Numbered from the stretch's first letter, positions 29,778-63,853 are shown. The stretch: 64,000 nucleotides of DNA from Phyllobates terribilis (GCF_046119375.1 NW_027362763.1:329468001-329532000), one strand, 5' to 3'. Translations and numbers: made by a program. The notes: generated from the letters alone by a model not told the origin.

Positions 29778-31194
29778 TTATTGAGTTACTGTATTTTTTT
29801 GGAGAGGTGCAGTAACTGAAAAAATAGGAGTATTTTTTATTTACAGTATTTACCTTATTGGTTAAATAATTGAATATTTTGATAGATCAGACTTATTGAT
29901 GCAGCTATCGTAAATATGATTTTTTTTTAATCTATATTTAAAAGGGGAATATGTGGATGATTAGAATTGTTAGATTTTTTCATTTTCTTATTTTTTTTTT
30001 ACTTTTTATTTTACTTTTAACTGTATTTTTTTAGTCCACATAAGACACTTGATTTGATTATTTGTACTATGTATTATAATATTTTAGTATTGCAGTATAT
30101 AGTGAAAATTACAGTCTCCTATGAAGCTCAGTTAATGGCTTGGCTTCACAGGACTACCAAGATGGTGGCAATGGGGCCTTCGGCAGGCTCTTCACTCTTA
30201 TGGCAACCTATTGGCACCCTGTGGGCACTTGAACGTTCTCCCTGCTAAATTCACCCCAGTTAAATGTAGCTATGTTGCAGTCGGAGATAGCCTGTAACAT
30301 TTAAGTAGTTAGACAACAGCATTCAGTTAGTTCTGAACACTGCTGCTAGAGACAGGTGCTGGTTGTATAGCACAGCCGGCACCTGCCCTTTGTGGAGCAG
30401 AGTCAGTCTGCTCCATCTACTTGAAAATTCTCTATGATATAATCTTACGTAATGGGGCGAGAAATGGTTAAATAGTATCAGAGGGGGATTGTTACATTAA
30501 AAATGCAGTTCAATCTACAGGCAACATGTTACAGAGCAGGATGAGCAGAGAAGAAGGATAGTTTTATGGGAAAAGATTTAGCCGAACTTATTCATTTAAA
30601 TCACTGCTTATCCTGGGTTTTAAGTATAGTGGGCAGTACTAGTCAGTAAATGACAGCTGTCTCTATATGTACAAGGAAGGCTGTCAGTCACTGAATAGGA
30701 CCACCCACTGAAATGAAAAGTCCCGAATGAGCAGAAATATAAATAGCCTATGTAATTTGTATTGGATTGTAATCATTGAAGTAGTCACAGAGTGGCTAGC
30801 ACCAAGTTTCTCTGAGGTAGCCTTTTTGAGCTGAAAACCTCAAACAGACTCAACAAAAAACTCAAGAAATAAAGTTTGCAAGTTTTAAATTAGGTCCTGG
30901 AATTTTACCATTTTTTTCACTATAATAATCTGCCAGCTTCTATGTGCCCTCTCTGCATGGCACAAGGTTGTGGCCAAGTGTCTTGACTGATGGAGACGGA
31001 TACTGTCAGCAAAAACATCCAGCATCATGCCGTCAGCAGCGGATAGAAACACAATTGATTGTATGTAGAGAGCAACAACTGGTTAGGAGAACTACTGTTA
31101 TAATACCCATGGCACTCTGCGGCCTCTCTGCCTGTATCTCTGCTTCTTGTCCAGGAAGACCTTCATGTCAATCAAAGATATGGTGATCAACTAT

Positions 31195-31650
31195 ATACAG
31201 TAATATATTATATAGTAGGCAGTAGATTACCCCACATAAATAATATCTTATATAGTAATCAGTATATTACCCCATATAAATAATACCTTATATAGTAATC
31301 AGTATATTGCTCCATATGAAAATATCTTATATAGTAGGCAGTATAATAAATAATATCTTATCTAGTAGGCAGTATATTACCCCATATAATAATATCTTAT
31401 ACAGTAAGTACATTACCCTATATAAATAATATCTTATATTATAGGCACTATATTATCCCATATAAATAATATATTCTATATCAGGCAGTATTTTACCCCA
31501 TAGAATAATATCTTATACAGTACGTACATTACCCCATATAAATAATATCTATATAGTAAGTGGCATATTATTCTATTTAATAATATAATATATAGTAGGC
31601 ATATATTACCCCATATAAACAATGTATTGTATAGTAGGCAGCCCATATAT
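31195..31650. repeat. AT-rich ~40-bp minisatellite
   Basis: TATATTACCCCATATAAATAATATCTTATATAGTAGGCAG units. Confidence 0.88.
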
Positions 31651-36880: not shown

Positions 36881-38836
36881 CTCAGCAAAATTCACTGCTG
36901 CTTGTTTCCGGCACACAACTGTGCAGTCAAAATCGGCACTACACCTGTAGATTAATTTCCAGTGGGATATACAAAATAAAATGTATACTTTTTATTATAT
37001 GTGTATTTATTTCCATGGTGGTCATTCACTCCTTATATGTAGACTTATGACTTTTTTGTGATTACTCACTCAGATTAAGTAATGGTTATACTTATTTACT
37101 TAGTTGTGTATTTCTAATTCCCAGAGCAGTGTAATTTCCAAAATGGGGACACTTGAGGGTGGATTCTGCTCTTCTGGCACTTAGGTGCTCTATATATGGA
37201 GCTCGCAAACTATTCTACGATTATTTGTTCTCCAAGAATCAAATAGTGCTCCATCCCTTCCGAGTCTCGCCGTGTGGCTAAGCAGTATGTACTGTACAGC
37301 CACATATGGGGTATTGCCATGTTCAGCAGAAATTGTGTGACAAATTTTGGTGCCATTTTTACCCATTTCTCCGTATGACAATGTAAAATTTGGGGCTACA
37401 ACAAAATTTTTGTGGTAAAAATGTAATTATTTTTTCTTCACCGCTCAATGGTATAAAATTCTGTGACATACCACACCCATGGTATCAATATGATCACTTC
37501 ACCCCTAGATCGATTCATTGAGAGGTGTAGTTTGTAAAATGAGGTCACTTATGTGGGGGCTCTGCTATTCTGGTACCTCTGGGGTTCTGCCACTGTGACA
37601 TGGCACTCTCAAACCAGACCAGCCAAATCTGCACTACCATATCATTCTCCTTCTGAGCTTTGCACTGTGGTATGAGGTATTAGCGTACTCAGGATAGATT
37701 GCGTAACATATTTTGTGGTCCAAATTCTTCTATTATTCCTTTTGAAAATTGAAAACTTGGGGCCAAAGTAACATTTTAGTGGAAAAAATGGTAATTTTCC
37801 ATTGACCTAGCCCAATGTTATACAATTCTGTGAATCGCTTGGGGGTTAAAAATGCTGACTACACAGTTAGATTAATTCTTCAAGAGGTGTAGTTTCCAAA
37901 ATGGGGTCACTTGTCGAGGTTTCTGCTGTTCTGGCATGTGAGGAGCTCTTCAAATGTGACATGTTATTCACAATCTATTCCAGTTAAAATTTCACTCCAG
38001 AATTCAATTGGCGCTTCTTCCCTTCCAAGACCTGCCGTGGGGAAATTGCACAACAAATTGTATGTTCCATTTTTTCCTATTACTCCTGTGAAAATGAAAA
38101 ATTTGGGGCTGAAGCAACATTTTTGCGGGAAAAATTTATTTTTTCATTTTCACGGCTCAACATTATAAAATTCTGTGAAGTGCTCACTACATTTCTATAT
38201 GTTTCTCGAGAGGTATAGTGTTCAAAATGGTGTCACTTATGAGAGGTTTCCACTATTTAGGCACATCAGGGCCTCTGCAAACACGACATGACGTCCTCTA
38301 TCTATTCCAGCCAAAAAGTCAAATGGCGCTCCTTCCATTCCAATCCCTGCTGTGCGCCCAAACTGTAGTTTTCCACCACATTTCCTGTTACCCTTGTGAA
38401 AATTAAATATTTGGGGCAAAAGGAACACGTTTGTGGGAAAAATGTATTTTTTCCTTTTTACAGCTCAACATTCTGAAATTCTGTGAAGCAACTGTGGGTT
38501 CAATATGTTCTCCACACCTCTAGATAAATTCCTCGAGGGCTGCAGTTTCCAAAATAGGGTCACTTGTAGGGGGTTTTCTCTGTTTCGGCCCATCAGGGGC
38601 TCTGCAAATGCGACATGGTGTTCCCTATCTATTTGAAATTTTCAAAATGAAAATTGTGAATTTTTTGCCAAAATTCCAATATTTTCACAAATAAATGCAT
38701 GAAATTTAAACCTAAATTTACCACTACATACAGTAAAGTACAATGTGTCACGAAAAAACAATCTCAGAATCACTGTTATTCATTGAACCATTCCAGAGTT
38801 ATTACCATATAAAATGACACTGGTCAGAACTGCTCA

Positions 38837-39263
38837 TGACCGTGTACGGCCAACCCGGGTTCCATAGTTCCGTAAGACCCCTCCCCATCTTACCGACCTC
38901 AAGTACCTTAACAAATAAAAACACTGCACCTGTAATTTCTTTGGATAAATTTGGCCACAGCGGCCATTTTATTAACCAACAACATTAACATATAAACATT
39001 ATTATTCAAATAAATAAGAAGGGAGGGTTCTTGGAGTTAAAAATTAGATCTGGCATAACTAAACCGAAATCGAACCACCGTATTACCCTCAGCCGTCCAT
39101 CACCAGCTCAAGGGCACCAAACAGCTCCCAGGGTAAAACCCCATCCAGAGCCCCAAAAACCAAATGCCAGATCACCCCGGTTAATCAAGCCACTGCCTGT
39201 AAATTTCCAATAACTTTCCCACCGACACTTCTGTGCCAACTCCAAGAACCCCACCCCCCGCCA
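38837..39263 (-). repeat. Ngaro repeat B2
   Basis: 427-bp direct repeat of 39647-40073 (offset 810); 3 mismatches seen. Confidence 0.92.
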
Positions 39264-39432
39264 AGCCACTGCGACATACCTTCTTACACAACTTTACATA
39301 ACACTTTTAATATAACCCAGTATAATGCACAACATCAAATAACCCTTTAATTCTTTCACGATAAACAACCACCCTTTTACCATTAATCACAAAATATACC
39401 AATGGAAAACAAAAAAGAGGGTGGGTGGGTGG

Positions 39433-39646
39433 GAACTTCTCTCAATGACTTCTTCCCTGGACTGCCCGTTTTCCCGCACTTTTCCCTATTATACCTCTTC
39501 CCCTCTTTACCCCACCCCCATCCAAATGCCAGCCCCTCCAAGCCTATATCCAATCCCGACCATTGGGATTTAAAAATTGCACCCTCCTGGCCAATCCCGG
39601 TCATGTGGGGCTTCCTTCTAGGTTCCCATGCCTCCAGCCCCCTTCT
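39433..39646 (-). repeat. Ngaro repeat A2
   Basis: 214-bp direct repeat of 45430-45643 (offset 5997); abuts B1; 3 mismatches seen. Confidence 0.92.
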
Positions 39647-40073
39647 TGACCGTGTACGGCCAACCCGGGTTCCATAGTTCCGTAAGACCCCTCCCCATCT
39701 TACCGACCTCAAGTACCTTAACAAATAAAAACACTGTACCTGTAATTTCTTTGGATAAATTTGGCCACAGCGGCCATTTAATTAACCAACAACATTAACA
39801 TATAAACATTATTATTCAAATAAATAAGAAGGGAGGGTTCTTGGAGTTAAAAATTAGATCTGGCATAACTAAACCGAAATCGAACCACCGTATTACACTC
39901 AGCCGTCCATCACCAGCTCAAGGGCACCAAACAGCTCCCAGGGTAAAACCCCATCCAGAGCCCCAAAAACCAAATGCCAGATCACCCCGGTTAATCAAGC
40001 CACTGCCTGTAAATTTCCAATAACTTTCCCACCGACACTTCTGTGCCAACTCCAAGAACCCCACCCCCCGCCA
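39647..40073 (-). repeat. Ngaro repeat B1
   Basis: Copy of B2, immediately downstream of the SGNH ORF in element orientation. Confidence 0.92.
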
Positions 40074-40095
40074 CAAACGAACAGCCCTGACCACC

Positions 40096-40691
40096 TCAGG
40101 CTCGTGAGCGCCCCAACACTGCCAAAGCCCTCTCAATCCCCTCCTGTATAGATAATGCCCATAAATCAATCCCAATATCGTTCAGGTTCACCCCATCCTT
40201 TGCCCAAAAATCACCAACCCCTGCCTCAAGATCAAGATGCCGAACACTTACACCCCCATTTCTACCAACAAAAGCTGCTATGGCTCTATTCAACTTTACT
40301 CGTGCCCTATTAATGCCCTTCACTGATCTGGCCTCCCTCCAATTTTTTCTCGGCACAATGTCAGACCAAACCGTCAACACCCCAGGAAAAGATGTCCATA
40401 ACCTTAAAAAATCAATTCGAATATCCCTCATCAATTCCCTAACTGGCCGAACCCCCAAATCATTCCCCCCCATATGCACCACCAAAATGTCCGGCGCCCG
40501 GTCCAAACGAGCCGCCTTATGGAATTCAGGCAGCACCCTTCTCCATACCATCCCTCTAAAACCCAGCCACCGGACCACCACTTGCTCTCTGCTAAAACCC
40601 AGTTGCCTACCGTTTGGCCTCATATCCGCCCGCAGCGCCCCCCAATGAACGAAAGAGTGTCCAAGAATCCAGACTAATAACGGGACGTCAC
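40096..40691 (-). CDS. SGNH/GDSL hydrolase domain of the Ngaro element
   Basis: Open frame extends upstream of the first ATG (40623): VWILGHSFVHW (block I), VVHMGGNDLG (block III), DGVNL (block V, His replaced by Asn). Confidence 0.85.
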
Positions 40692-40760
40692 CTGCAATAA
40701 GACAACCAAAAAGGGGGGGTATTCACTTCTGGACAAAATAAAAACCACCATTCCGCATAC

Positions 40761-41810
40761 CTAATGCCGTACATAGGACAGATAACGATCTGAACTCCAC
40801 CTCCCGATGCGTTTTATCACATCCTTTCCTAAACCCAAACCGTCCGCTTCTGACGCCGCACCGATTCTGAAAGAATGCGACCCGTACACCTCAGGACTAA
40901 GGCCCAATTCCCGGATCCCTTTTTTAAATACTGCAATAAATTGAAAACGTGACAAAAACTCTCCGTTTTTATGACACAATAATGGGCCCTTACGTCCCGA
41001 CCAAACCTGCCAGTAAGCCATTAAACATCTCCTAGGACAAATAAAAGATCCATTAACCTCACCCAATACCACTAGCTTGCCTCTGCCCAATTGATCCATC
41101 TTCGCCCTCCTAATCCAAAATTCGATGCCCCCTTTCCGACCGCTCACATCCTCAGCAAACAAACCCCCAACCTTATTCCTACTTGGTGCCACCAACTCAC
41201 CTAATCTTAGTGCGCCAAAGAACGCCAATGAAAAAGCCAATCTAAACAGTGTGGCTTCAAAAACCGAACAACAGATCTTATCCAACACTAAACCCAACCG
41301 CTCTAAAATACTAAAAGTCACCGGTCTTCGTTTATCTAACACTTTACTTCCTCTCCTAAAGCCCCTAAGTGCTTGCTTCACTAAAAACGATTTTGTAACA
41401 TCTTTTAACCCCTGTAATCTAAAACCGAATGCCAATCCTGCAACAAATTTACCAACTTTTGACACAGACCATCCAATCTCTGCTGCCCTTCCCACAAGAA
41501 ACAACACCGCCATCTCTCTATCTCCTTCACCTTCCACCACACCCCACTCCAGAATCCAACTTTGCCATACTCGCCACGATGCCTCGTATGATGCCCAGGT
41601 CTGCCTCGTAATGGACTCCCTTATTAACCGTCCGGCTCCTCCATAACCAGTTGCCACAAATGCGAAGGGCATTCTTGACCCACGTCCCCTGCCTCTGGTG
41701 CTAGCGCCCGAAAACGGTCCCACTGAAAACAAGATAAGGCATCTGCTATAGAATTTTGTACACCTGGAACATGTACCGCTGTAATCCAAGCGTTCAAATT
41801 GAGACAACAA
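40761..41810 (-). CDS. tyrosine recombinase/integrase
   Basis: ALRLGELV, RRAKMDQ, SHSFRIGAA, GRWSSDRYLSYVR (R-H-R-Y tetrad); uninterrupted frame; first ATG at 41672. Confidence 0.93.
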   Translation of the reverse strand: MLSQFERLDYSGTCSRCTKFYSRCLILFSVGPFSGASTRGRGRGSRMPFAFVATGYGGAGRLIRESITRQTWASYEASWRVWQSWILEWGVVEGEGDREMAVLFLVGRAAEIGWSVSKVGKFVAGLAFGFRLQGLKDVTKSFLVKQALRGFRRGSKVLDKRRPVTFSILERLGLVLDKICCSVFEATLFRLAFSLAFFGALRLGELVAPSRNKVGGLFAEDVSGRKGGIEFWIRRAKMDQLGRGKLVVLGEVNGSFICPRRCLMAYWQVWSGRKGPLLCHKNGEFLSRFQFIAVFKKGIRELGLSPEVYGSHSFRIGAASEADGLGLGKDVIKRIGRWSSDRYLSYVRH

Positions 41811-43471
41811 AGAACTAGTTCCCTGAGCAGCCTAATAACCGGTGGGGACGAGGCCGACAAGCTGTTGATGACAGACACCACTCCCATGTTATCGCAATGA
41901 AACCGAATTCTCCTGTTGGCAAAACACTCCCCCCAAATAGTAACCGCAACAACAATAGGGAACAATTCCAAAAACGCCAGGTTCCTCGTAAGTCCCCTCT
42001 CCGTCCACCCAATCGGCCATGCCCCAACACTCCACCGCCCTTTCCAGTAGGCCCCGTATCCAGCACCTCCCGCAGCATCTGTAAAAATCTCACAATCAAA
42101 ACTGCTTACAAACTCCTGCTGGATTAATGACCTGCCATTATAGCTTTCCAAAAACAACTTCCAAACCCTCAGGTCCTCCTTGTGTTCCTTATTTAGGCGG
42201 ATAAAATGATGAGCCCCACGCACTCCTGCTGTGGCGCTTGACAACCTGCGACAAAATATTCTGCCCATTGGCATAATCCTGCATGCAAAATTTAAGCGCC
42301 CCAACAGCGATTGTAGCTCCCTCAGGGTCACCTTGCGCAACCTCCCGACTCTATCGACCTCCTGCTTGAGCAGACACAATTTATCTTCAGGTAACCGGCA
42401 CTCCATCCTTTCTGTATCAATAACAATGCCCAAAAAACTTAGGATTGTGCAAGGGCCTTCCGTCTTTTCTTTTGCCAATGGTACGCCAAAATGCTCCGCT
42501 ACCCACACCATAGTACCTAACAAATTCCTACACAATAACGATTGCGGAGGGCCTATAAACAAAAAATCATCCAAATAATGAATGACTGAATTAACTGATG
42601 CCAGGTCCTTCACCACCCATTCCAAAAAGGTACTAAACGTTTCAAACAAAGAACACGAAATTGCACAACCCATTGGCAAACACCTATCCATGTAATATGC
42701 CCCATTCCAAAAACAACCTAACAACTGGATGCTATCCGGGTGAACTGGCAGCAACCGAAAAGCCGACTCGATATCCGTCTTGGCTAACAACGATCCTGAC
42801 CCATATCGCCGTACCCATCGCACCGCCGCATCAAATGATGTATATTCAACTGAACATAATTCCTGTGCAATGCCATCATTCACCGAGAGCCCCTTCGGGT
42901 ACGACAAATGCTGAATCAAACGAAACTTATTCAGCTCTTTTTTGGGCACAACCCCCAGTGGCGAGATAATCACCCTGCTGCTAGGTAATACCCGAAGCGG
43001 TCCCGCCATCCTTCCCAATTCCACCTCCTTAGCCAACTTCACGCTAACCACATCCGGATGAAGGGAAGCCGACGTCAAATTTTTTAGTGAAAAGGGGACC
43101 TCGTGCTCAGGAGGAGGGATTCTAAAACCTTCCAAAAACCCATCCGAAATGACCTTAGCCTTCGACTGATCCGGATACCTACTTAGAAAGGGGGCCATCG
43201 CGTGCACCCTCACCGGAGTCAACCCTTTGACCGGTACCCACTGTAGGCTTTCCCTTACCCTTCTTAAAGCATTTTGATACTCCGTGTGAGCTTCCATTAC
43301 AATGGGAGCACACGTGTTTGAATTTACAGGAGGTCCCGTACTTGCATTGGCCGTCATTAAATTGCCAGCAAGTTCCCACTTCCTTCTTAGTGCTTTGTGC
43401 CCCTTGGTTACCTCCCCCTTGTCCTGCTGATTGGTTACCACTACTGCTGCTCCCGTGAAAGGACTGCCCAT
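41624..43471 (-). CDS. reverse transcriptase plus RNase H
   Basis: KTDIESAFR, LPMG, YLDDFL; RNase H motifs FTDA, LELF, HCDN, IADALS; 615 aa uninterrupted. Confidence 0.95.
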   Translation of the reverse strand: MGSPFTGAAVVVTNQQDKGEVTKGHKALRRKWELAGNLMTANASTGPPVNSNTCAPIVMEAHTEYQNALRRVRESLQWVPVKGLTPVRVHAMAPFLSRYPDQSKAKVISDGFLEGFRIPPPEHEVPFSLKNLTSASLHPDVVSVKLAKEVELGRMAGPLRVLPSSRVIISPLGVVPKKELNKFRLIQHLSYPKGLSVNDGIAQELCSVEYTSFDAAVRWVRRYGSGSLLAKTDIESAFRLLPVHPDSIQLLGCFWNGAYYMDRCLPMGCAISCSLFETFSTFLEWVVKDLASVNSVIHYLDDFLFIGPPQSLLCRNLLGTMVWVAEHFGVPLAKEKTEGPCTILSFLGIVIDTERMECRLPEDKLCLLKQEVDRVGRLRKVTLRELQSLLGRLNFACRIMPMGRIFCRRLSSATAGVRGAHHFIRLNKEHKEDLRVWKLFLESYNGRSLIQQEFVSSFDCEIFTDAAGGAGYGAYWKGRWSVGAWPIGWTERGLTRNLAFLELFPIVVAVTIWGECFANRRIRFHCDNMGVVSVINSLSASSPPVIRLLRELVLCCLNLNAWITAVHVPGVQNSIADALSCFQWDRFRALAPEAGDVGQECPSHLWQLVMEEPDG

Positions 43472-44078
43472 ACCTCACTGGGGCCATAACCTTCAGCCAC
43501 AAACCAATGTCCTTTTGATCCCATCTGATCTCAGGGCGGACTGCCTTCCTCTGCCGAAATTGCTCGTCATATCGTAACCATGCCTGACCCCCGTAAGTCC
43601 TATGAGCCTCCCCAATAGCATCAAGGTAGCAAAACAAACCCGAACAATTATCAGGAGCTTTTTCTCCAGTAACGCTAGCCATTATTGCAAAAGCTTGCAA
43701 CCAATTGACAAACGTCTGTGGAATCAACCTCCACCTACGCTTCTCTTCTTCCTCTTTTTTACTGTCTTCCTTTTTTCCCTTATCCAGGTTAAACTTTTCC
43801 AACGGAAGAAGGGAAAAAATTTCGACATACTCGTCCCGCCAAATTTTTTCTTTAACCTCTTTTTTTAAATGCGCCCCCAATGGCCCCTCAAAGCACACGT
43901 ATACCTCCCCTTTCGCCCTATCATCCAGTTTTATACTATCCTCATTTTCCTTTTCTGTCTGCACACACACCGACACCCCAGAAGGTGTCCCAGCTGTACA
44001 CCCCGCCGACCTGGCCGACTCGCTCCCCACCTGCAACAACGCCGGTTGACTAGGTAGCCAAGCCCCCGCCGGTGACAA
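43179..44078 (-). CDS. gag-like ORF1, C-terminal half (CCCH and CCHC zinc fingers)
   Basis: CWQFNDGQCKYGTSCKFKH (C-x7-C-x5-C-x3-H) followed by CSHCNGSSHGVSKC (C-x2-C-x4-H-x4-C); no ATG at the frame start. Confidence 0.85.
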   Translation of the reverse strand: MSPAGAWLPSQPALLQVGSESARSAGCTAGTPSGVSVCVQTEKENEDSIKLDDRAKGEVYVCFEGPLGAHLKKEVKEKIWRDEYVEIFSLLPLEKFNLDKGKKEDSKKEEEEKRRWRLIPQTFVNWLQAFAIMASVTGEKAPDNCSGLFCYLDAIGEAHRTYGGQAWLRYDEQFRQRKAVRPEIRWDQKDIGLWLKVMAPVRYGQSFHGSSSSGNQSAGQGGGNQGAQSTKKEVGTCWQFNDGQCKYGTSCKFKHVCSHCNGSSHGVSKCFKKGKGKPTVGTGQRVDSGEGARDGPLSK

Positions 44079-45351
44079 CCCCCTTTGAATGGCCCCCCCC
44101 GCCGTCTATTCTCGCCAAAATGCGCGACATGCTAACCAACAAATCCCTAAACCCGCTTACATCTGACCCACTACCTCCCCTACCATTTTCCCTGCTGGGC
44201 CCAGACACCTGCCTATCACCTAACCCATCCGCTACAGACCCCGCGGGCGACAAACCATACATAGACGCATACTCACGAAGCTGCGCAGGTGCTGTGTCCC
44301 CGCCAGCCGTACTCCCCGAGTCCTGATGAGTCCTTGGTTCGTCTTGTTCTTCTCCATAATCCAGTCCGACCGACCCCTGCTGCTCAAGGCCCGCGCCCCT
44401 GGCCTCCTCGTCACCAGGGGGGACCCGAGCCCGTGCCGACCTCCCCGCCGTTCGTCCTCCAGTCCTCACCGCCGACCGTGCACCTCCGCGATTTTTAGAC
44501 CCGGACTCACCAGCCCGATCCGTGTTGGTCCGTGGATAACTGCCAGGCAACTCCGTGCTGCTGCCCGCCGCTCCATCCCTCTGCCTGGAGAAACTTGAGC
44601 CAGGCAGCAGGTCCTGGAATTGTTGCTGCCTGCCCGTGTAGCTCCGCTGCTGTCTGCGCCCTCTGGTCTGTCTGGCAGGCACCCCGACAGGAACGTCGCC
44701 AGGTGTGCCTGCCGCGCTGGTGTTCCCTCCGTTCCCCGCTGCAGGATTGCCGCCCTTTTTTCTTTTGAATAACCGGCGTCTTGAATCGCCGCTGGATCTT
44801 GGAGCGGGGGGCGTGTCCCTGCGCCCGCCGCTCATTGGCTGTGCGTCCCTTTCGTCTGTCTCCGGGGCCGGAAGTGACGTAGTCCCCATTTCCAGTGAGG
44901 CCCCGCCCCCCGGATGACGCGTCTGCGGCCCGGGCCTTGCTTCCGGCGCGGCCTGGGCTCTAGTACTGCGGCGCGCCGACGGGGGAGGCCGCACCACGAC
45001 GGACCGGGGAACTTCAGTCGCGGACCGCGACCCGATGCAGGGGGAGCCCGCAGACCGGCTGGGCGGATTCCTGCCGCGGCGGGCACGCCGGCAGGGGATT
45101 CCGCCGGCATGCTCCCCGGACACAGGGTCCCCTGAGGGGCTCCGCAGTCTGCGCCTGCTGCCCGTACCAACCATCTCCAGGGAAAGCCTCTCGGGGGGCC
45201 GCGTCCTCCTGGTACTTCTTCCCAAACCCGACGGTGATTCTTCCTCTCCGGCATTCCCCAGAAGTCCGGCCAGCTGGGCCTCAAGCCACCCTCCTTGCCT
45301 GGATCTGGCAGTCTCCCTCAGCCTGGCGATAAGGGACTCCACGGACTCCAT
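44050..45351 (-). CDS. gag-like ORF1, N-terminal half (basic, likely disordered)
   Basis: Long open frame directly after repeat A1; ATG at 45351 (MESVESLIARLRE); joins 43179-44078 if one base is removed from the C8 run at 44093-44100. Confidence 0.75.
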   Translation of the reverse strand: MESVESLIARLRETARSRQGGWLEAQLAGLLGNAGEEESPSGLGRSTRRTRPPERLSLEMVGTGSRRRLRSPSGDPVSGEHAGGIPCRRARRGRNPPSRSAGSPCIGSRSATEVPRSVVVRPPPSARRSTRAQAAPEARPGPQTRHPGGGASLEMGTTSLPAPETDERDAQPMSGGRRDTPPAPRSSGDSRRRLFKRKKGGNPAAGNGGNTSAAGTPGDVPVGVPARQTRGRRQQRSYTGRQQQFQDLLPGSSFSRQRDGAAGSSTELPGSYPRTNTDRAGESGSKNRGGARSAVRTGGRTAGRSARARVPPGDEEARGAGLEQQGSVGLDYGEEQDEPRTHQDSGSTAGGDTAPAQLREYASMYGLSPAGSVADGLGDRQVSGPSRENGRGGSGSDVSGFRDLLVSMSRILARIDGGGGHSKGVVTGGGLAT

Positions 45352-45429
45352 AATAGCGAGAAGAGTGTCCAAGCAATTAGAAAGGTAAAAATATATATAT
45401 ATATATTTTTTTTTTTGATCAGTGCTCCA

Positions 45430-45643
45430 GAACTTCTCTCAATGACTTCTTCCCTGGACTGCCCGTTTTCCCGCACTTTTCCCTATTATACCTCTTCCCC
45501 CCTTTACCCCACCCCCATCCAAATGCCAACCCCTCCAAGCCTATACCCAATCCCGACCATTGGGATTTAAAAATTGCACCCTCCTGGCCAATCCCGGTCA
45601 TGTGGGGCTTCCTTCTAGGTTCCCATGCCTCCAGCCCCCTTCT
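45430..45643 (-). repeat. Ngaro repeat A1 (5' end, promoter-like)
   Basis: Copy of A2; minus strand carries GATTGGCC and TTTTAAAT motifs. Confidence 0.9.
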
Positions 45644-48600
45644 GGAAGGTGAAAACAGGCTTCGGGTGAAGGAGTTAAACCAATAAAAAGTCCCTGTTGT
45701 GGTTACATAATATTCGCTTCATGCGTCATTACTCCACGAAAATAAAAACCACTGTTACTCACTTTTGGGTAAATTACCAGCTTTGGAAAGCATTGGTACA
45801 ATGACTAAGGATGTGAATATGTTTTAAGCGCATTGGATTTTTCACTTATATATGCTGCAGTTTAGATTTTAACTGCTGTTGAAATAAAATACCATAGTTA
45901 GGAAATTGTATCTGTGCTGACTGTATTTCTTGTTTTAAGCATTGGTAAATAGATGATTAAAAAATGGCAAATTGCCAGACCACACTGTATGAAGCCTTTG
46001 TGATTTTAACTTTGTGATGCCTACAGCAGTTCTAGGCTGTAATACAGATACTATACAGTGTACACATACATAGATTCTCAAGTATTATCAAATTAAGTGC
46101 ATATCGTTAGGATAGGCCACCAATATTGGACCAGGGGAGACCAAGAACTGGCACTCCTAGTGATCAGTAAGTGACAATTCCCCGCACAACCACTTCAAAA
46201 TGTATAATCTGGAAAACAAAGAAAGACAACTGGGGCTCACTGGATGCATGACCCATTCAATATTCTGATCAACAGTGATGCCAGCAGTCTGACCCCTACA
46301 AGTCATATATTAAGGTGGTTTTCCAGGCACAATAAGAAAAAAAATCTGGCTTTCCTTGTAGATTCACAAATCTCCTTGTTACCTTAATTTACCTATTTTA
46401 GCGCCCCTTCAGCTCACTACAGCTACATTTGTGGACTATTGTTTTTTACATTCTGATCTTCCTGCCAGCTCTCCCTATGCACCTCTAACTACATTTACCA
46501 AGAAGCAGTACTCTCTGGCTTCTCTATCAGAGCTTCATCTGTCCCACAGCTTACTCACTCCCATTCTTAGCGCCCACCCACTCAACTTTTACAGCACCAT
46601 CCTGAGACTCCTACACAGTCTCAAGATGGAAAAATCGCTGCTCAGTTTCTACCACTTAATACTTCCCAAACTTCACCTAATTCGTGCTATCCTAAGACTT
46701 CTGCAGTCAAAAATGTTACAGGAGCAGACAATGGCACCACACAAGCTCCATGTACTGTAGGGGAGCAATGAGTCATAGAATGGATTTATTTATTATATTG
46801 TAATCTAGCAATCTAGAAGCCAAGCACCTTATCCTCTGAACAATATCACTAGTTGATATGATTACTATTCTCTGTCGGCTCTGCTCTCCCTTCCTGTACA
46901 CATCCCAGTCACTCACTGACTACAATCACAGGTCACGACGTCCCCAAGACATCACGGTTCAGACAGAGCACACTGCTCTGAGAGCTATAGGCTGAGTCCC
47001 GCCTCCTGCATTGACTGACAATCTACATTCTGTTCAAAGCACAGACAGAAAATCTCTACTTTGTGCTTTGTATGGACTGTAGCAGCAAGTTAACTAGAAG
47101 TCACATGACCATAAGTGGCAGCTCAGAACAAAGCATCATTTTAACAGCAACAAAATCATGAAATTTCATAATATCACATGTGTTTTATAATGTGTTAATA
47201 ATCTGTGTGTCTGGAAAATCCATTTAATAGTTAAAGTGTAGGACTATGTAAAATACACTTTTTTCATATAATTTAATAAGACTCAAAGTTTACTATATCC
47301 TTCTAACCATATAATTAAACTGTTGAATACACCAGCACAGGCTTATCTTTTTAATATGAGTGAAGATGCTGCTCTAAAAGTGAACAGTTGAGTTATTTAA
47401 AGATGTGATAGCTACTGGTGTAGCAGAGCTGAATTTCATTCATATATCAAGAAACTAATGTAGTATGTATGCCATGTAATAGATTTAGCTACAGCTCTTT
47501 GTAAAATCATAGATAACCAAACATTATTTTGTAATATGGTGTGCAAAATGACCAATTCAACTCCATCTAATTTTTCATCTAAACAATTAGCCTTGTTATA
47601 TTTCTATTATTTCAATTGTCCTGGAAGAGGTAGTTATTTATAGTGCATTGAGAACACTTGAAATATACAGCCAGGGATTCTGGATCATTTCCTGGGAGAA
47701 GAGCGCTAGCGGACATGACATTTAGCTCTAGTACGATTCTGAAATCATATGTGTTTATGGTATGATATTTACTGCAAAGTAGAAAATCAATAGCAGCAAA
47801 TGTAAAACATGTCAGCCCCTAAGTCATCTGCATAAGAATCCATAGCAATATCAGATGAAAATAACCTTAATGTGAGAAATTAAAAGGGTCATCCACAGAA
47901 TCACATTATTTTTAATGAAGCACAGTAAATGCATACTTATTGTTAATATACAAACTAAGGCCAACATATAGTTTCTTTGTAACTTTCTGTCTTTTTTCAT
48001 CTCTATCTGCCTTTCTGTGCATCCAGCTTTACATAGCCGAATGGGCGGTCATATTCTTATTTACTAAATCTACATTTCCCAGCAGCACTTGCTTCCCCGT
48101 AGTGCTGCAGATCCCTCACTTTTTCCCCTGTGCTCTTACCTCTCTGAGGTATCATCAAACTAATGTAAGTGTAGAATTCACATGCTTCTGTTTACTCTCT
48201 GCTCCTTTGCAGTACCCTGCCTAACCAATTTTATCTTAGGCAGGGTACTGTATAGTTGCAGTGTGGTTTTAAATCATTAGTTGGTTTTAGCAGAGCAGGT
48301 TTTAGTAAAGCTCCACTCTCCTGCACTCCTCCATAATGGCAATGAAGAGCTGTGTTTGTTGGGTGCTGCAGACAGATCAATAATGTGAAACTATAAATGC
48401 TTATGCTCTATTGATACATATGACATAAAATAATCTTGTACATTATCCATCAATAAAGATAAATTTGCATTTTCACATTACTGAACTCTCAGGAGCTGAC
48501 ATCAAAACACAGCTTAACTAATCTCAGCCCCTGTGCACTGAGCCCCATATTGCAGTATATGTCTCCTCTCAACCCAATATATACAGCCCATCCAGCTGTA

Positions 48601-50372: not shown

Positions 50373-51138
50373 TAGTGCTGAGCGAGCGTGGTCTGATAAA
50401 GTGCTATCCCGGCATGCTTGGGTGTTATCCGAGTATCTTGTAGTACTCTTCTACTATACTCGAGTCCCCGCGGTAACATGTTTTGCTGCGGTACAGACAC
50501 AACACATGCAGCAATTGGCTGTTTATTAGGTAATCACTGCATGTGTTGCTTCTATCTACCGCCGCAAAACATGCTACCACAGGGACTCGAGCATAGTAGC
50601 AGAGCACTACAAGATACTCGGATAACACCTGAGCATGCTGAGATAACACCTTATCAGACCACACTCACTCAGAACTACTGGCAACCCATCAGCAACCTGC
50701 ACCTGCGTCACAGGGGAGCAGGTGACTGCATGCATCGGCATCATGCTATCTAAATGCCGCTGTCAGTGATTGACAAGGGTGTTGCTCGGGTGTTATCCGA
50801 GTATCTTGTAGTACTCTGCTACTATGCTCGAGTCCCCGCGGTAGCATGTTTTGCAGCGGTACATACGCAACACATGCAGCAATTGCCTGTTATCACTGCA
50901 TGTGTTGCTTCTATCTACCGCCGCAAAACATGCTACCGCAGGGACTCGAGCATAGTAGCAGAGCACTACAAGATACTCGGATAACACCTGAGCATGCTGG
51001 GATAACACCTTATCAGACCACACTCACTCAGCACTACTGGCAACCCATCAGCAACCTGCCACTGCGTCACAGGGGAGCAGGTGACTGCATGCATAGGCAT
51101 CATGCTATCTAAATGCCGCTGTCAGTGATTGACAAGGG
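50373..51138. repeat. fold-back MITE plus flank, tandemly duplicated (~359-bp period)
   Basis: GGGTGTTATCCGAGTATCTTGTAG…GATTGACAAGGG occurs twice; each copy is internally palindromic. Confidence 0.85.
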
Positions 51139-53305: not shown

Positions 53306-54180
53306 TATACACACACAGATACACATGCTCACAGAAATGGGGACACGTACACACGCAGGCAAGCACACACAGAAATGCACACGCAGTCATGCACAGACAC
53401 ACTCAGACAATCACACACACAAAAATGCAGACATGCAGGGAAGCACGCACACACGTGTGAAGACACATATACACACGTAGACACGCACACACAGACATGC
53501 AGGCACTCAAATACATACACAGAAACGCACACATAAACACAGACACACACAGAAATGCATATGCAGACACACACATGCAGGCATATGCACACACAAACAC
53601 ACACACATCCAGGCATATATACACACACACGCACATGCAGGCATATACACACACACACATGCAGGCATATACACACACACATGCAGGCATATGCACACAC
53701 ATGCTGGCATACACACACACATGCAGGCATATACACACACATACATGCAAGCATATTCACACACATGCAGGCATATACACACAGACATGCAGGTATATAC
53801 ACACACACATGCAGGCATATACACACACATGCAGGCATATACACGCAGGCATATACGCACACACACATGCAGGCATATACACACACATGCAGGCATATAT
53901 ATACACACATGCAGGCATATATACACACACACATGCAGGCATATACACACATGCAGGCATATACGCACACAGTCATATATACACACACATGCAGGCATAT
54001 ATACACACACACATGCAGGCATATTCACACACACATGCAGGCATATACACACACGCATGCAGGCATATACACACACGCAGGCATATACACACACACACAT
54101 GCAGTCATATACACACACATGCAGGCATATATACACGCACACACAGGCATATATACACTCAGACACACATGCAGGCATAT
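53306..54180. repeat. CA-rich minisatellite (CACACATGCAGGCATATA)
   Basis: ~20-bp units; they account for the His/Thr and Cys/Val ORFs at 53.3-54.3 kb. Confidence 0.95.
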
Positions 54181-55812: not shown

Positions 55813-56439
55813 TACATAAAAACTCATACAAACACACACAAATATTACACTACCTTGGCTTGTCTCCAGTCCTGCTCATATAGTTTACAGAAGCGCTCTT
55901 AAGGCGGGAGACTGCAGTGCAGGGCGCGCTGTGACGTCACTTTTAGCAGACATGGCGGCCCTGTCTGCTAAGTGTGATGCTGCAGTGCAGCCCCTGCTCT
56001 CCTGCTCCCAGGCCCCACCCCCTACTGTCCTGGGCATCGCGGTGGTGAAAGTGAGCGTGCGCGCCCTTAAAGGGCCCGTGACCACTTTTTTTTCCCCTTC
56101 TTTTTTTTTTTTAAATTCTCCGCTGACTCCGACACTGTCTTCTCTGCAGGGGGCCCGGGGCCCACCGGGAATTCTCCCGGCACCCTGCCAGTCCTGTCCG
56201 AGCCTGGCTCCGGACCCCCCACCCAAGCTCACAAATTCAACTGTATTGACTGGTTGCCGATACAGTTGAAAGCAATGTTGAGTGAGGGAGCGTGACGCTC
56301 CCATCTATCCCCCTCTGCATCTGATGTCACTGATGCAGACACTGACAGCGGGCGCAATGACGTCACTACATGGAGCCCACTGTGCTGAGATATGCAGGCG
56401 CTCACTACAGAGACCGGAGCAGCGGGAGAACAAGGAGGA

Positions 56440-57720
56440 GTGCATTCTCCTGCATGGAGTCCGATGGGGAGTTCACACTACTGTATGCAGTCCAATGGGG
56501 AGTGTATTCTTCTATATGGAGTCCGATGGGGAGTGCATTCTACTATATGGAGTCCGATAAAGAGTGCATTTTACTTTATGGAGTCCGATGGGGAGTGCAT
56601 TTTACTGTATGGAGTCCAATGGGGAGTGCATTTTACTGTATGGAGTCCGATGGTGAGTGCATTCTACTATATGGAGTCCGATGGGGAGTGCATTCTACTA
56701 TATGGAGTCCGATGGGGAGTGCATTTTACTGTATGGAGTCCGATTGGGAGTTCATTTTACTGTATGGAGTCCGATGGGTAGTGCATTCTACTGTATGGAG
56801 TCCGATGGGGAGTGCATTCTACTGTATGGAGTCCGATGGGGAGCACATTCTACGGTATGGAGTCCGATGGGGAGTTCATTCTACTGTATGAAGACCGATG
56901 GGGAGTGCATTCTACTGTATGGAGGCTGATGGGGAGTGCATTCTACTGTATGGAGGATGATGGGGAGTGCATTCTACTGTATAGAGGCCGATGGGGAGTG
57001 CATTCTGTATGGAGGCTGATGGGGAGTGCATTCTACTGTATGGAGTCCGATGGGGAGTGCATTCTACTGTATGGAGTCCGATGGGGAGCACATTCTACGG
57101 TATGGAGTCCGATGGGGAGTTCATTCTACTGTATGAAGACCGATGGGGAGTGCATTCTACTGTATGGAGGCTGATGGGGAGTGCATTCTACTGTATGGAG
57201 TCCGATAGGGAGTGCATTTTACTTTATGGAGTCCGATGGGGAGTGCATTTTACTGTATGGAGTCCGATTGGGAGTTCATTTTACTGTATGGAGTCCGATG
57301 GGTAGTGCATTCTACTGTATGGAGTCCGATGGGGAGTGCATTCTACTGTATGGAGTCCGATGGGGAGCACATTCTACGGTATGGAGTCCGATGGGGAGTT
57401 CATTCTACTGTATGAAGACCGATGGGGAGTGCATTCTACTGTATGGAGGCTGATGGGGAGTGCATTCTACTGTATGGAGGATGATGGGGAGTGCATTCTA
57501 CTGTATAGAGGCCGATGGGGAGTGCATTCTGTATGGAGGCTGATGGGGAGTGCATTCTACTGTATGGAGTCTGATGGGGAGTGCATTTTACTTTATGCAG
57601 TCCGATGGGGAGTGCATTCTACTGTATGGAGGCCGATTGGTTTTTGCATTATACTGCATGGAGGCCGATGGGGAGGGCATTATTCTGCATGGAGGCCGAT
57701 GCGGAGGGATTATACTATAT
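56440..57720. repeat. 31-bp minisatellite
   Basis: GAGTCCGATGGGGAGTGCATTCTACTGTATG units with variant blocks that recur about 524 bp apart. Confidence 0.95.
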
Positions 57721-63618: not shown

Positions 63619-63852
63619 AGCAATTGGAAGCTTTGCAATATTGTTATTCGCAGGGAAATTGTTTGGAAAAACTTGTTAAACCTGGCGCATTTGAATTTCC
63701 AAAGATTCAATCNNNNNNNNNNNNNNNNNNNNNNNNNNNNNNNNNNNNNNNNNNNNNNNNNNNNNNNNNNNNNNNNNNNNNNNNNNNNNNNNNNNNNNNN
63801 NNNNNNNNNNNNNNNNNNNNNNNNNNNNNNNNNNNNNNNNNNNNNNNNNNNN
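63619..63852 (+). CDS. candidate host coding exon spanning the N-gap (product unknown)
   Basis: Acceptor TTACATTCATCTTTCCAG, open frame QLEALQYCYSQGNCLEKLVKPGAFEFPKIQ, and (N)TAAGT right after the gap fits a GTAAGT donor. Confidence 0.45.
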
Positions 63853-63853
63853 N
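63713..63853. other. run of 141 N (gap or masked segment)
   Basis: Directly visible. Confidence 0.99.

What the first reader, a model, noticed from the sequence alone, without database searches (positions are those of the whole stretch)
40096..45351. One ORF1 splice donor appears to serve two in-frame acceptors, giving ORF1-YR and ORF1-SGNH fusion proteins
Seen: on the minus strand ORF1 contains a consensus donor CTTC|GTGAGT (exon ends at 44277; 1075 nt from the ATG at 45351, so phase 1). A pyrimidine-rich acceptor CCTTATCTTGTTTTCAG|TG (exon starts 41722) is phase 1 in the YR frame. A second acceptor CCCCCCCTTTTTGGTTGTCTTATTGCAG|GT (exon starts 40691) is phase 1 in the SGNH frame. The SGNH block I (GHSF, catalytic Ser) lies upstream of that ORF's first ATG, so a complete hydrolase needs an upstream exon. 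Inference: alternative splicing could yield a ~678-aa ORF1-YR protein and a ~556-aa ORF1-esterase protein, the latter resembling the esterase-bearing ORF1p of some CR1/L2 LINEs. Both products would bypass the ORF1 frameshift. SGNH ORFs in vertebrate Ngaro elements are known; I am not aware of this expression scheme being described, but I cannot search the literature. Each phase match has a 1-in-3 chance probability, and the YR has its own ATG, so the SGNH junction is the stronger case.
Basis: partly seen in the sequence, partly recalled or inferred. Interest (0 to 1): 0.85.

Follow-up and report, generated by a model that had tools for sequence, protein, structure and literature searches.

The report
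Spliced ORF1 fusions in frog Ngaro retrotransposon
A frog Ngaro-type retrotransposon very probably expresses its recombinase and its esterase from spliced messages that graft both onto the front part of its first protein, a scheme I did not find described for this class of mobile element.

Summary
On the minus strand there is one complete Ngaro element (~45651-38834). It has ORF1 ATG 45351, donor C|GTGAGT (exon end 44277, phase 1), acceptor TTTTCAG|TG (exon start 41722, phase 1 into YR) and acceptor TTGCAG|GT (exon start 40691, phase 1 into SGNH).

In the window alone this is near chance. Relatives decide it. Gene models from about 20 frog and toad species, mostly NCBI RefSeq, encode ORF1(N-terminus)-SGNH proteins. 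Their junction peptide matches the one predicted here. One Bufo bufo locus carries both an ORF1-YR isoform (619 aa) and an ORF1-SGNH isoform (496 aa).

Exact exon mapping in Engystomops, Eleutherodactylus, Spea and Xenopus laevis elements finds introns at homologous acceptors. In three of them the donor is the homologous GTGAGT.

The ORF1-SGNH product (helical N-terminus, Arg-rich disordered linker, C-terminal esterase) has the domain order of the esterase-type ORF1p of L2/CR1 LINEs.

This copy is damaged: ORF1 is frameshifted downstream of the donor, and the esterase's catalytic His is Asn.

I saw no RNA reads. Support rests on annotation plus conservation. I found no published description; the standard review proposes frameshifting for YR.

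The parts
45430..45646 (-). A1 split direct repeat (5' end of the element)
   Evidence: 98% identical to A2 at 39433-39649.
44277..45351 (-). ORF1 exon 1: ATG to donor, 1075 nt, 358 codons plus 1 nt. GC-rich and Arg/Ser/Pro-rich.
   Evidence: The N-terminal motifs (helix; RRxRPPxRLSP; RRRxxSPxxDP; GRNP) are conserved in 14 frog proteins. The exon ends with ...AGGDTAPAQL, homologous to the exon end of the relatives.
44271..44280 (-). 5' splice donor CTTC|GTGAGT (last exon base 44277, GT at 44276-44275, phase 1)
   Evidence: GTGAGT sits at the homologous codon in the Spea, Engystomops and Eleutherodactylus elements and is the only positionally conserved GTRAGT.
44505..44514 (-). Second candidate donor CTG|GTGAGTC (last exon base 44511, also phase 1)
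   Evidence: It lies in the non-alignable low-complexity part of ORF1 and has no comparative support.
44050..44276 (-). Continuation of ORF1 in the unspliced RNA, ending at a premature stop because of a frameshift between about 44110 and 44080 (G8 run at 44093-44100)
   Evidence: The Engystomops element has an uninterrupted 583-aa ORF1 that reads through the donor.
43179..44078 (-). Gag-like C-terminal part of ORF1 with a CCCH zinc finger, in a different frame in this copy
   Evidence: Pfam zf-CCCH. 61% identical to residues 298-583 of the intact Engystomops ORF1.
41624..43471 (-). RT/RNase H ORF (615 aa); intronic in both spliced forms
   Evidence: Pfam RVT_1. 54-63% identical to the RT of the four related elements.
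41723..41745 (-). Acceptor 1: pyrimidine-rich tract plus CAG, inside the RT codons for ADALSCFQ; exon starts at 41722
   Evidence: CAG|TGGGA occurs at the homologous place in all four related elements and is used in the Spea, Bufo and X. laevis models. The pyrimidine tract is in the top 3.6% of element positions.
40761..41722 (-). YR exon (tyrosine recombinase, 319 codons plus stop)
   Evidence: A profile of this ORF and its relatives matches Cre recombinase at E = 5e-7. Arg (R173) and the HxxR box (H283/R286) are invariant.
41641..41650 (-). Possible mini-exon donor CTG|GTTATG, 75 nt after acceptor 1 (mini-exon 41722-41648, phase kept)
   Evidence: Mini-exons of 27 aa (Bufo) and 84 nt, 28 codons (X. 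laevis) starting at acceptor 1 are spliced on to SGNH. The site in the window is weak, and this step is an inference.
40692..40719 (-). Acceptor 2: C7T5...TTATTGCAG in the 69-nt non-coding spacer after the YR stop; exon starts at 40691
   Evidence: A pyrimidine tract plus CAG lies 69-89 nt after the YR stop in W, L001, L002 and L003, and the X. laevis model uses a TTTTCAG|GT acceptor at the same place. It is used in the gene models. The tract is in the top 1.5% of element positions.
40096..40691 (-). SGNH esterase exon (197 codons plus stop). GHSF at 40662-40651; GGND present.
   Evidence: Pfam Lipase_GDSL_2, below the curated threshold. Alignment A1. Best PDB sequence match is the ZfL2-1 ORF1p esterase 4c1b.
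40186..40188 (-). Asn codon where the catalytic His of block V (DGVH) should be
   Evidence: H in 11 of 11 relatives and N in the window.
39644..40073 (-). B1 split direct repeat
   Evidence: 99% identical to B2 over 430 nt.
39433..39649 (-). A2 split direct repeat
38834..39263 (-). B2 split direct repeat (3' end of the element)

Best explanation
The region is one young but slightly damaged copy of an anuran Ngaro-type tyrosine-recombinase retrotransposon. Its order is A1, ORF1, RT/RNase H, YR, SGNH, B1, A2, B2.

Proposed mechanism, stated for the family with this copy retaining all the signals:
- The unspliced RNA is the genome and the message for full-length ORF1, which is gag-like and has a CCCH finger.
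- A donor inside ORF1 (GTGAGT, phase 1, just after the conserved ...AAGGxTAPxQ peptide) is alternatively joined to one of two phase-1 acceptors.
- One acceptor lies in the RT/YR overlap (CAG|TGGGA). The other lies in the short non-coding spacer after the YR stop.
- The two subgenomic messages use the ORF1 AUG. They encode ORF1(N-terminal module)-YR and ORF1(N-terminal module)-SGNH. A third form passes through a 25-29-codon mini-exon that begins at the YR acceptor.
- The shared N-terminal module is a short helical hairpin followed by a long Arg-rich disordered region. It presumably supplies RNA/RNP binding or nuclear targeting to both enzymes.
- ORF1-SGNH thereby has the same domain order as the esterase-type ORF1p of L2/CR1 LINEs.

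Shown: the sites and phases in the window; their conservation in four other elements; the existence of matching annotated isoforms in many species; and the folds.

Inferred: that the introns are really removed in vivo, that the fusion proteins are made, and what the N-terminal module does.

In this copy the ORF1-SGNH product would be catalytically dead (His to Asn), and full-length ORF1 is frameshifted.
For: 1. The sites and phases are verified in the window.

2. A search with the SGNH ORF against 1.84 billion representative proteins finds dozens of 400-700-aa proteins with SGNH at the C-terminus and an N-terminus homologous to window ORF1 exon 1. Their junction peptides match the predicted one.

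3. Most of these are NCBI RefSeq models, and some come from other annotation projects. The species include Bufo gargarizans, B. bufo, Engystomops, Eleutherodactylus, Hyla, Hyperolius, Dendropsophus, Rana, Aquarana, Lithobates, Rhinoderma, Spea, Xenopus tropicalis and X. laevis (RefSeq), and Pristimantis and Leptodactylus (other projects).

4. Several B. bufo loci carry both ORF1-YR (619 aa) and ORF1-SGNH (496 or 523 aa) isoforms.

5. Exact mapping gives these introns:
- Engystomops: G|GTGAGT ... TTGCAG|G, 3510 nt.
- Eleutherodactylus: G|GTGAGT ... TTACAG|A, 3904 nt. Both are phase 1.
- Spea and X. laevis models enter at TTTCAG|TGGGA, homologous to 41722.

6. In Spea, Engystomops and Eleutherodactylus the YR frame opens only 19-34 nt upstream of acceptor 1. 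In Spea and Eleutherodactylus there is no ATG between the acceptor and the conserved start of the YR domain. The SGNH frame is closed 4-25 codons upstream of acceptor 2. Apart from the pyrimidine tract and CAG, I saw little similarity between the spacers on inspection.

7. No X_XXY_YYZ slippery heptamer lies in the RT/YR overlap of W, L001, L002 or L003.

8. ORF1 exon 1 is real coding sequence with conserved motifs.

9. An AlphaFold model of the Engystomops fusion shows helices at 2-30, disorder at 34-247 and an SGNH fold with pLDDT above 90. Foldseek gives GDSL esterases and PAF-AH. The best PDB sequence hit is the ZfL2-1 ORF1p esterase 4c1b. That protein has the order coiled coil, Arg-rich motif, esterase (PMC3905857).
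Against: - No RNA read, cDNA or assembled transcript that crosses a junction was seen. The Logan and ENA ORFs I could inspect are unspliced.
- Gnomon models can be guided by cross-species protein alignments, so the species are not independent witnesses.
- The Spea model contains a GC-AG intron that looks like a repair of a degenerate ORF1. It also has a YR-to-SGNH splice that removes the catalytic-Tyr region. Not every annotated intron need be real.
- The donor and acceptor 1 lie in coding sequence (G-E in ORF1; F/L-Q-W in RT). Part of their conservation is therefore protein constraint.
- The phase conservation of the donor and of acceptor 1 follows from frame conservation.
- The window's YR has its own ATG 17 codons after the acceptor. 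The Engystomops (L002) copy and many unspliced Logan and ENA contigs of relatives have an in-frame Met before GHS.
- The window's donor has a poor exon side, and a second in-phase GTGAGT exists at 44511.
- No relative closer than 69% (SGNH) was found, so the window's own family could not be examined.
Confidence: 0.75

Rival explanations
1. There is no functional splicing. The fusion proteins are artefacts of gene predictors chaining ORFs inside transposon copies. YR is made by programmed -1 ribosomal frameshifting from RT, as the standard review proposes. SGNH is made by re-initiation, a non-AUG start or an internal ATG.
For: - Poulter & Butler 2015, quoted in PMC13003380, propose -1 frameshifting for YR.
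- YR is in the -1 frame relative to RT in W, L001, L002 and L003.
- The Spea model contains questionable introns.
- Unspliced contigs of several relatives have an in-frame Met 1-46 codons before GHS.
- No junction-crossing transcript was seen.
Against: - No canonical slippery heptamer lies in any of the four overlaps examined.
- The same junctions recur in many species and in several isoforms per locus.
- GTGAGT is the only positionally conserved donor hexamer.
- Acceptor 2 sits in an otherwise poorly conserved spacer, with a stop just upstream and no ATG in the window or in Eleutherodactylus.
- The leading 'M' of the Logan ORFs may be an alternative start codon called by a prokaryote-style gene caller, and these leaders look like translated pyrimidine tracts.
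Confidence: 0.12
2. Only the ORF1-to-SGNH splice is a real expression device. YR is translated in another way, from its own ATG on a separate or unspliced message or by frameshifting. The ORF1-YR isoforms are minor or artefactual.
For: - The window and Engystomops have an ATG shortly after acceptor 1.
- Acceptor 1 is embedded in conserved RT codons, so its conservation is less telling.
- ORF1-SGNH models are far more numerous than ORF1-YR models among the hits, although the searches were seeded with SGNH.
Against: - ORF1-YR isoforms of 619 aa are annotated at many B. bufo and B. gargarizans loci (cluster of 16 sequences). P0191 is another example.
- Spea and Eleutherodactylus have no ATG before the YR domain, and the YR frame opens 19-34 nt before the acceptor in Spea, Engystomops and Eleutherodactylus.
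- The mini-exon isoforms show that acceptor 1 is used in Bufo and Xenopus models.
Confidence: 0.2
3. Splicing occurs, but in this copy from a different donor, for instance CTG|GTGAGTC at 44511. Alternatively it is cryptic, non-adaptive splicing that merely destroys the genomic RNA.
For: The 44511 site scores better on the exon side and is also in phase 1.
Against: - The junction peptides of all relatives end with the ...AAGGxTAPxQ motif that precedes 44277, not with anything like the sequence before 44511.
- Both junctions keep long, conserved reading frames open, which is not expected of cryptic splicing.
Confidence: 0.08

Closest known systems
Ngaro-like YR retrotransposons of amphibians with an SGNH ORF (e.g. 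Repbase DIRS-53_XT / DIRS-54_XT of Xenopus tropicalis; Goodwin & Poulter 2004; PMC9210276)
   Same: - Split direct repeats in the order A1 ... B1 A2 B2.
- ORF order gag-like, RT/RH, YR, SGNH.
- Overlapping frames and no methyltransferase domain (PMC9210276).
   Different: - The published descriptions I could read treat the four ORFs as separate and give SGNH 'no proven function'.
- No splicing is mentioned, and YR is proposed to be reached by frameshifting.
- Here the evidence points to ORF1-YR and ORF1-SGNH fusion messages.
- The window's family is at most 69% identical (SGNH) to anything in the protein collections.
Esterase-type ORF1p of CR1/L2 LINEs (ZfL2-1 ORF1p, PDB 4c1a/4c1b; PMC3905857)
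   Same: - Domain order: N-terminal helical module, Arg-rich segment, C-terminal SGNH esterase.
- The ZfL2-1 esterase is the best solved-structure sequence match of the Ngaro SGNH profile (E = 2.6e-5).
- Catalytic Ser, Asn and Asp-x-x-His are conserved in the relatives.
   Different: - In LINEs the protein is one contiguous ORF of a non-LTR element.
- Here it would be assembled by removing a 3.5-3.9-kb intron that contains RT and YR.
- N-terminal dimerisation is not shown.
- This copy has Asn in place of the catalytic His.
Retroviral subgenomic splicing in which the downstream protein starts at the gag AUG (avian leukosis/sarcoma virus env; also gypsy env). Recalled from general knowledge, not tested here.
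   Same: One 5' donor inside or just after the start of gag, alternative 3' acceptors in front of the 3' genes, and the unspliced RNA serving as the genome.
   Different: - About 230-360 residues of ORF1 are shared, not a handful of codons.
- The downstream products are enzymes (recombinase, esterase), not an envelope protein.
- The element is a YR retrotransposon without LTRs, protease or DDE integrase.

Membership tests
Ngaro (YR retrotransposon, order DIRS) | Reverse transcriptase / RNase H ORF | tested here: met
   Pfam RVT_1, E = 1.1e-7, above the curated cut-off. 54-63% identical to the RT of four related frog elements.
Ngaro (YR retrotransposon, order DIRS) | Tyrosine recombinase instead of DDE integrase | tested here: met
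   The single sequence gives no Pfam or PDB hit. A profile of the window ORF plus 7 relatives matches Cre recombinase at E = 5e-7. Arg (R173) and HxxR (H283/R286) are invariant, and there is a C-terminal ...RYLSYVRH.
Ngaro (YR retrotransposon, order DIRS) | Split direct repeats A1 - internal - B1 A2 B2 | tested here: met
   A1 45430-45646 matches A2 39433-39649 (98%). B1 39644-40073 matches B2 38834-39263 (99%).
Ngaro (YR retrotransposon, order DIRS) | No methyltransferase domain; in amphibians an SGNH ORF after YR | tested here: met
   No MT hit in Pfam. SGNH lies directly after YR (PMC9210276).
SGNH/GDSL hydrolase | Block I Gly-x-Ser (nucleophile) | tested here: met
   GHS is invariant in 12 of 12 sequences, the window included.
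SGNH/GDSL hydrolase | Block III Gly-x-Asn-Asp (oxyanion hole) | tested here: met
   GGND is present in the window. G75, N76 and D77 are invariant.
SGNH/GDSL hydrolase | Block V Asp-x-x-His (catalytic His) | tested here: not met
   The window has DGVN (Asn codon 40186-40188). All 11 relatives have DGVH. The family is an SGNH hydrolase, but this copy is predicted to be inactive.
SGNH/GDSL hydrolase | Three-layer alpha/beta/alpha fold | tested here: met
   Tested on a relative (Engystomops P0011). pLDDT is above 90 over the domain. Foldseek top hits are GDSL lipases, PAF-AH and sialate O-acetylesterases, E about 1e-7, TM (target) about 0.7.
Esterase-type ORF1p of CR1/L2 LINEs | C-terminal esterase homologous to the ZfL2-1 ORF1p esterase | tested here: met
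   4c1b is the best PDB match, E = 2.6e-5.
Esterase-type ORF1p of CR1/L2 LINEs | N-terminal coiled coil that dimerises, followed by an Arg-rich motif | tested here: inconclusive
   Two short helices (residues 2-16 and 20-30, pLDDT about 77) are followed by an Arg-rich disordered region. Oligomerisation cannot be tested here.
Esterase-type ORF1p of CR1/L2 LINEs | Encoded as the first ORF of a non-LTR (APE/RT) retrotransposon | tested here: not met
   The host element is a YR retrotransposon, and the protein would need splicing. It works like this family but is not a member of it.
Retrovirus-like alternative subgenomic splicing | Donor in the 5' ORF and in-frame acceptors in front of the 3' ORFs, conserved among relatives | tested here: met
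Retrovirus-like alternative subgenomic splicing | Spliced RNAs demonstrated | not testable with these tools
   Only annotated gene models were available. No junction-crossing contig was found.

The most novel reading that the evidence does not exclude
Anuran Ngaro retrotransposons run a retrovirus-like alternative-splicing programme.

- A single N-terminal ORF1 module (helical hairpin plus Arg-rich disordered region) is grafted by splicing onto the recombinase and onto the esterase.
- The 3' ORFs that lack their own start codons are thus expressed from the ORF1 AUG.
- The element makes an analogue of the esterase-type ORF1p of LINEs.
- This would replace the frameshifting hypothesis for YR. 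As far as I could find, it would be the first case of functional subgenomic splicing in a tyrosine-recombinase retrotransposon.
Probability: 0.6. Interest if true: 0.7.

Novelty: new variant of a known kind. Interest (0 to 1): 0.6.

Why it matters
How DIRS and Ngaro elements express their overlapping ORFs, several of which lack start codons, has never been settled. The reference review suggests ribosomal frameshifting for YR, and the SGNH ORF is listed as having 'no proven function'.

A conserved donor with two acceptors gives a concrete and easily tested answer. It also predicts the real protein species: ORF1-YR and ORF1-SGNH, not bare YR and SGNH. That matters for anyone trying to reconstitute YR activity or to assay the esterase.

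The result links two unrelated retroelement classes through the same protein architecture, with an Arg-rich N-terminal module followed by a C-terminal esterase. This strengthens the idea from the ZfL2-1 work that lipid or membrane chemistry has a role in retrotransposition.

On the practical side, dozens of RefSeq 'genes' in frog genomes are transposon isoforms. They carry names such as 'serine/arginine repetitive matrix protein 1-like', 'translation initiation factor IF-2-like', 'filaggrin-2-like' and 'EZH inhibitory protein-like'.

Tried and rejected
- **ORF1 protein search.** A word-index search with the 433-aa ORF1 found nothing. The low-complexity sequence swamps the candidate list. Homology of the N-terminus became visible only through the SGNH-anchored hits.
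- **Genomic DNA for the best test cases.** None could be fetched for Bufo bufo, B. gargarizans, Hyla sarda or Hyperolius because the files are too large. P0002 and the X. tropicalis isoform P0054 are not on record because only the longest isoform of a gene is indexed. The Bufo locus with both isoforms was therefore compared at protein level only.
- **Direct transcript evidence.** Logan and ENA members of the clusters either stop at or read through the donor, or start just upstream of GHS. None crosses a junction.
- **Same-family copies.** There is no second copy in the window and no protein more than 69% identical in the collections.
- **-1 frameshift for YR.** No X_XXY_YYZ heptamer lies in the RT frame within the overlap of any of the four elements examined.
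- **YR-to-SGNH short intron, as in the Spea model.** In the window the nearest GT gives phase 2, and the joined frame would hit a stop at once. In Spea this splice deletes the catalytic-Tyr segment. I rejected it as the general route.
- **Weight-matrix scoring of splice sites.** I used an approximate matrix written from memory and a crude pyrimidine-tract filter. These are useful only as a rough screen. No MaxEnt-type model was available.
- **Literature.** Six full-text searches and nine look-ups by id (seven papers read; two ids not held) found no description of splicing in Ngaro or DIRS elements. Goodwin & Poulter 2004 and Poulter & Butler 2015 are not held, so I cannot exclude a remark there.

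Full report
**What is there**

The minus strand of 38834-45651 holds one complete Ngaro-type tyrosine-recombinase retrotransposon.
- The split direct repeats are A1 45430-45646 and A2 39433-39649 (98% identical), and B1 39644-40073 and B2 38834-39263 (99% identical over 430 nt).
- Between them lie five coding segments:
  - a GC-rich ORF1 starting at ATG 45351;
  - a gag-like segment with a CCCH zinc finger;
  - an RT/RNase H ORF of 615 aa (Pfam RVT_1);
  - a YR ORF;
  - an SGNH/GDSL ORF.
- The YR is too divergent for a single-sequence Pfam or PDB hit. A profile built with relatives matches Cre recombinase at E = 5e-7.
- No other copy is in the window.

**Check of the observation**

- Exon 1 runs from 45351 to 44277, 1075 nt, and ends in phase 1 before GTGAGT.
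- The acceptor TTTTCAG|TG puts 41722 at codon position 2 of the YR frame.
- The acceptor TTATTGCAG|GT puts 40691 at codon position 2 of the SGNH frame.
- The joined frames give 678 and 556 residues.
- GHSF precedes the first ATG of the SGNH frame, and that frame is closed by a stop 10 codons upstream of the acceptor.

Taken alone, this is weak evidence.
- The exon side of the donor is non-consensus.
- A second GTGAGT with last exon base 44511 is also in phase 1.
- Four GTRAGT hexamers per 6.8 kb is about the chance number.
- The pyrimidine tracts are unusual for this purine-rich strand, in the top 3.6% and 1.5% of positions, but that is not decisive.

**Evidence from relatives**

A full HMMER search with the SGNH ORF against 1.84 billion representative proteins gave 1746 hits. 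Many are 400-700 aa long with SGNH at the C-terminus.

Their N-termini are homologous to window ORF1 exon 1. They end in the same motif as the window's exon 1 (...AAGGxTAPxQ) and are joined directly to ...PxLVWILGHS.

Most are RefSeq models. Others come from independent annotation projects.
- RefSeq models come from Bufo gargarizans, B. bufo, Engystomops, Eleutherodactylus, Hyla, Hyperolius, Dendropsophus, Rana, Aquarana, Lithobates, Rhinoderma, Ranitomeya variabilis, Dendrobates, Spea, Pelobates, Xenopus tropicalis and X. laevis.
- Other projects cover Pristimantis, Leptodactylus, Anomaloglossus, Pelodytes and Ranitomeya imitator.

In B. bufo the same loci carry three kinds of isoform:
- ORF1-YR, 619 aa, with the junction ...TAPGQL-V-GAVSPAG...
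- ORF1-SGNH, 496 aa.
- A 523-aa form in which a 27-residue mini-exon beginning at the YR acceptor is inserted before SGNH.

Exact mapping on genomic DNA gave two-exon solutions for two species:
- Engystomops: G|GTGAGT ... TTGCAG|G, intron 3510 nt, phase 1.
- Eleutherodactylus: G|GTGAGT ... TTACAG|A, intron 3904 nt, phase 1.

The Spea and X. laevis models enter the YR frame at TTTCAG|TGGGA, the exact homologue of 41722.

All four loci are full elements with the same ORF order.

In W, L001, L002 and L003 the donor hexamer is GTGAGT at the same codon. Acceptor 1 is CAG|TGGGA in all five elements. A pyrimidine tract plus CAG lies 69-89 nt after the YR stop in those four, in a spacer that showed little other similarity on inspection. 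The X. laevis model uses a different 5' exon and donor (CAG|GTACTG) but the same two acceptors.

In the Spea, Engystomops and Eleutherodactylus elements the YR frame opens only 19-34 nt before acceptor 1. Two of them have no ATG before the conserved domain.

No canonical -1 slippery heptamer lies in the RT/YR overlap of W, L001, L002 or L003. The review by Poulter & Butler (2015), quoted in PMC13003380, proposes frameshifting there.

**What the products look like**

ORF1 exon 1 has these conserved features across pipid to neobatrachian frogs:
- an N-terminal helix motif;
- RRxRPPxRLSP;
- RRRxxSPxxDP;
- GRNP.

An AlphaFold model of the Engystomops fusion shows two short helices (residues 2-30), about 210 disordered Arg-rich residues and a confident SGNH fold. 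The fold matches GDSL esterases and PAF acetylhydrolase.

By sequence, the closest solved structure is the esterase of the zebrafish L2 LINE ORF1p, 4c1b. That protein has the order coiled coil, Arg-rich motif, esterase (PMC3905857). The spliced Ngaro product therefore has the architecture of an esterase-type LINE ORF1p without being one.

**State of this copy**

The Engystomops element has an uninterrupted 583-aa ORF1 that reads through the donor into the zinc-finger part. In the window the frame changes between about 44110 and 44080, where a G8 run lies.

The esterase has Asn (40186-40188) where all 11 aligned relatives have the catalytic His. The ORF1-SGNH protein of this copy would therefore be inactive.

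RT and YR are open.

**Limits**

- I saw no RNA. The Logan and ENA contigs that I could inspect are unspliced.
- Gnomon models can be propagated between species by protein alignment.
- The Spea model contains a GC-AG intron and a YR-to-SGNH splice that removes the catalytic-Tyr segment, so some annotated introns are doubtful.
- The donor and acceptor 1 are inside coding sequence, so part of their conservation is protein constraint.
- The Engystomops copy and a number of unspliced contigs of relatives have an in-frame Met before GHS.
- The window's own family is not represented in the collections; the best match is 69% (SGNH).

**Comparison with what is known, and novelty**

The element itself is an ordinary member of the amphibian Ngaro group with an SGNH ORF (PMC9210276). 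The expression scheme is not described in any paper I could search. Two key subscription papers could not be read.

The scheme is implicit in RefSeq, but under misleading protein names.

I rate it a new variant of a known kind. Interest is 0.6.

Noticed in passing
window 40186-40188 (minus strand): The catalytic His of SGNH block V (DGVH) is Asn in this copy. All 11 aligned relatives keep His.
   Followed up: yes
window 44080-44110 (G8 run 44093-44100): The ORF1 frameshift is located by comparison with the intact 583-aa ORF1 of the Engystomops element.
   Followed up: yes
window 44505-44514: A second GTGAGT (CTG|GTGAGTC, last exon base 44511) is also in phase 1 and has a better exon side than the 44277 donor. 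It has no counterpart in the relatives.
   Followed up: partly
window 41648-41722; L003:6542-6616; L004:6795-6878: A 25-29-codon mini-exon starts at the YR acceptor and ends at an in-phase GT. It is used in Bufo (523-aa isoforms) and X. laevis models to reach SGNH. The window has only a weak candidate donor, CTG|GTTATG.
   Followed up: partly
L001:7747-7876 (Spea bombifrons): The annotated YR-to-SGNH intron removes the C-terminal ...RW..(Y) segment that should hold the catalytic tyrosine. The same model has a GC-AG intron inside a degenerate ORF1. Both are probably model artefacts or a non-catalytic isoform.
   Followed up: partly
proteins P0171, P0173, P0174 (Aquarana, Lithobates): In ranid families the annotated fusion keeps the ORF1 CCCH zinc fingers, in two or three copies, before SGNH. 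The donor there seems to lie at the end of ORF1, not in its middle.
   Followed up: no
proteins P0001, P0006, P0033, P0040, P0072 (source not looked up): Very long proteins (1867-3112 aa) carry three to six tandem SGNH domains about 25-30% identical to the Ngaro esterase.
   Followed up: no
RefSeq names of hits: Transposon isoforms are named 'serine/arginine repetitive matrix protein 1-like', 'translation initiation factor IF-2-like', 'filaggrin-2-like', 'EZH inhibitory protein-like' and 'collagen alpha-1(I) chain-like'. The cause is the low-complexity ORF1 exon.
   Followed up: no
window 45391-45416 (minus strand, 5' leader): An A11 run followed by a (TA)n microsatellite lies between the A1 repeat and the ORF1 ATG.
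   Followed up: no
window 44300-45300: ORF1 exon 1 is 63-78% G+C, against about 45-50% for the rest of the element, and both strands carry many spurious ORFs. It is CpG-island-like in composition.
   Followed up: no
window 37115-38575: Diverged repeats with a period of about 330-390 bp lie directly next to the 3' end (B2) of the element.
   Followed up: no
window 365-1007; 10781-11380; 27533-28248; 31193-31641; 50415-51138; 53567-54158; 56437-57725; 59716-61181: The window is rich in minisatellite arrays. Examples are a 31-bp unit x 42, a 39-bp unit, 24/30-bp units nested in a 371-bp higher-order repeat, and a 359-bp unit x 2.
   Followed up: no
window 63713-63853: A run of 141 N.
   Followed up: no
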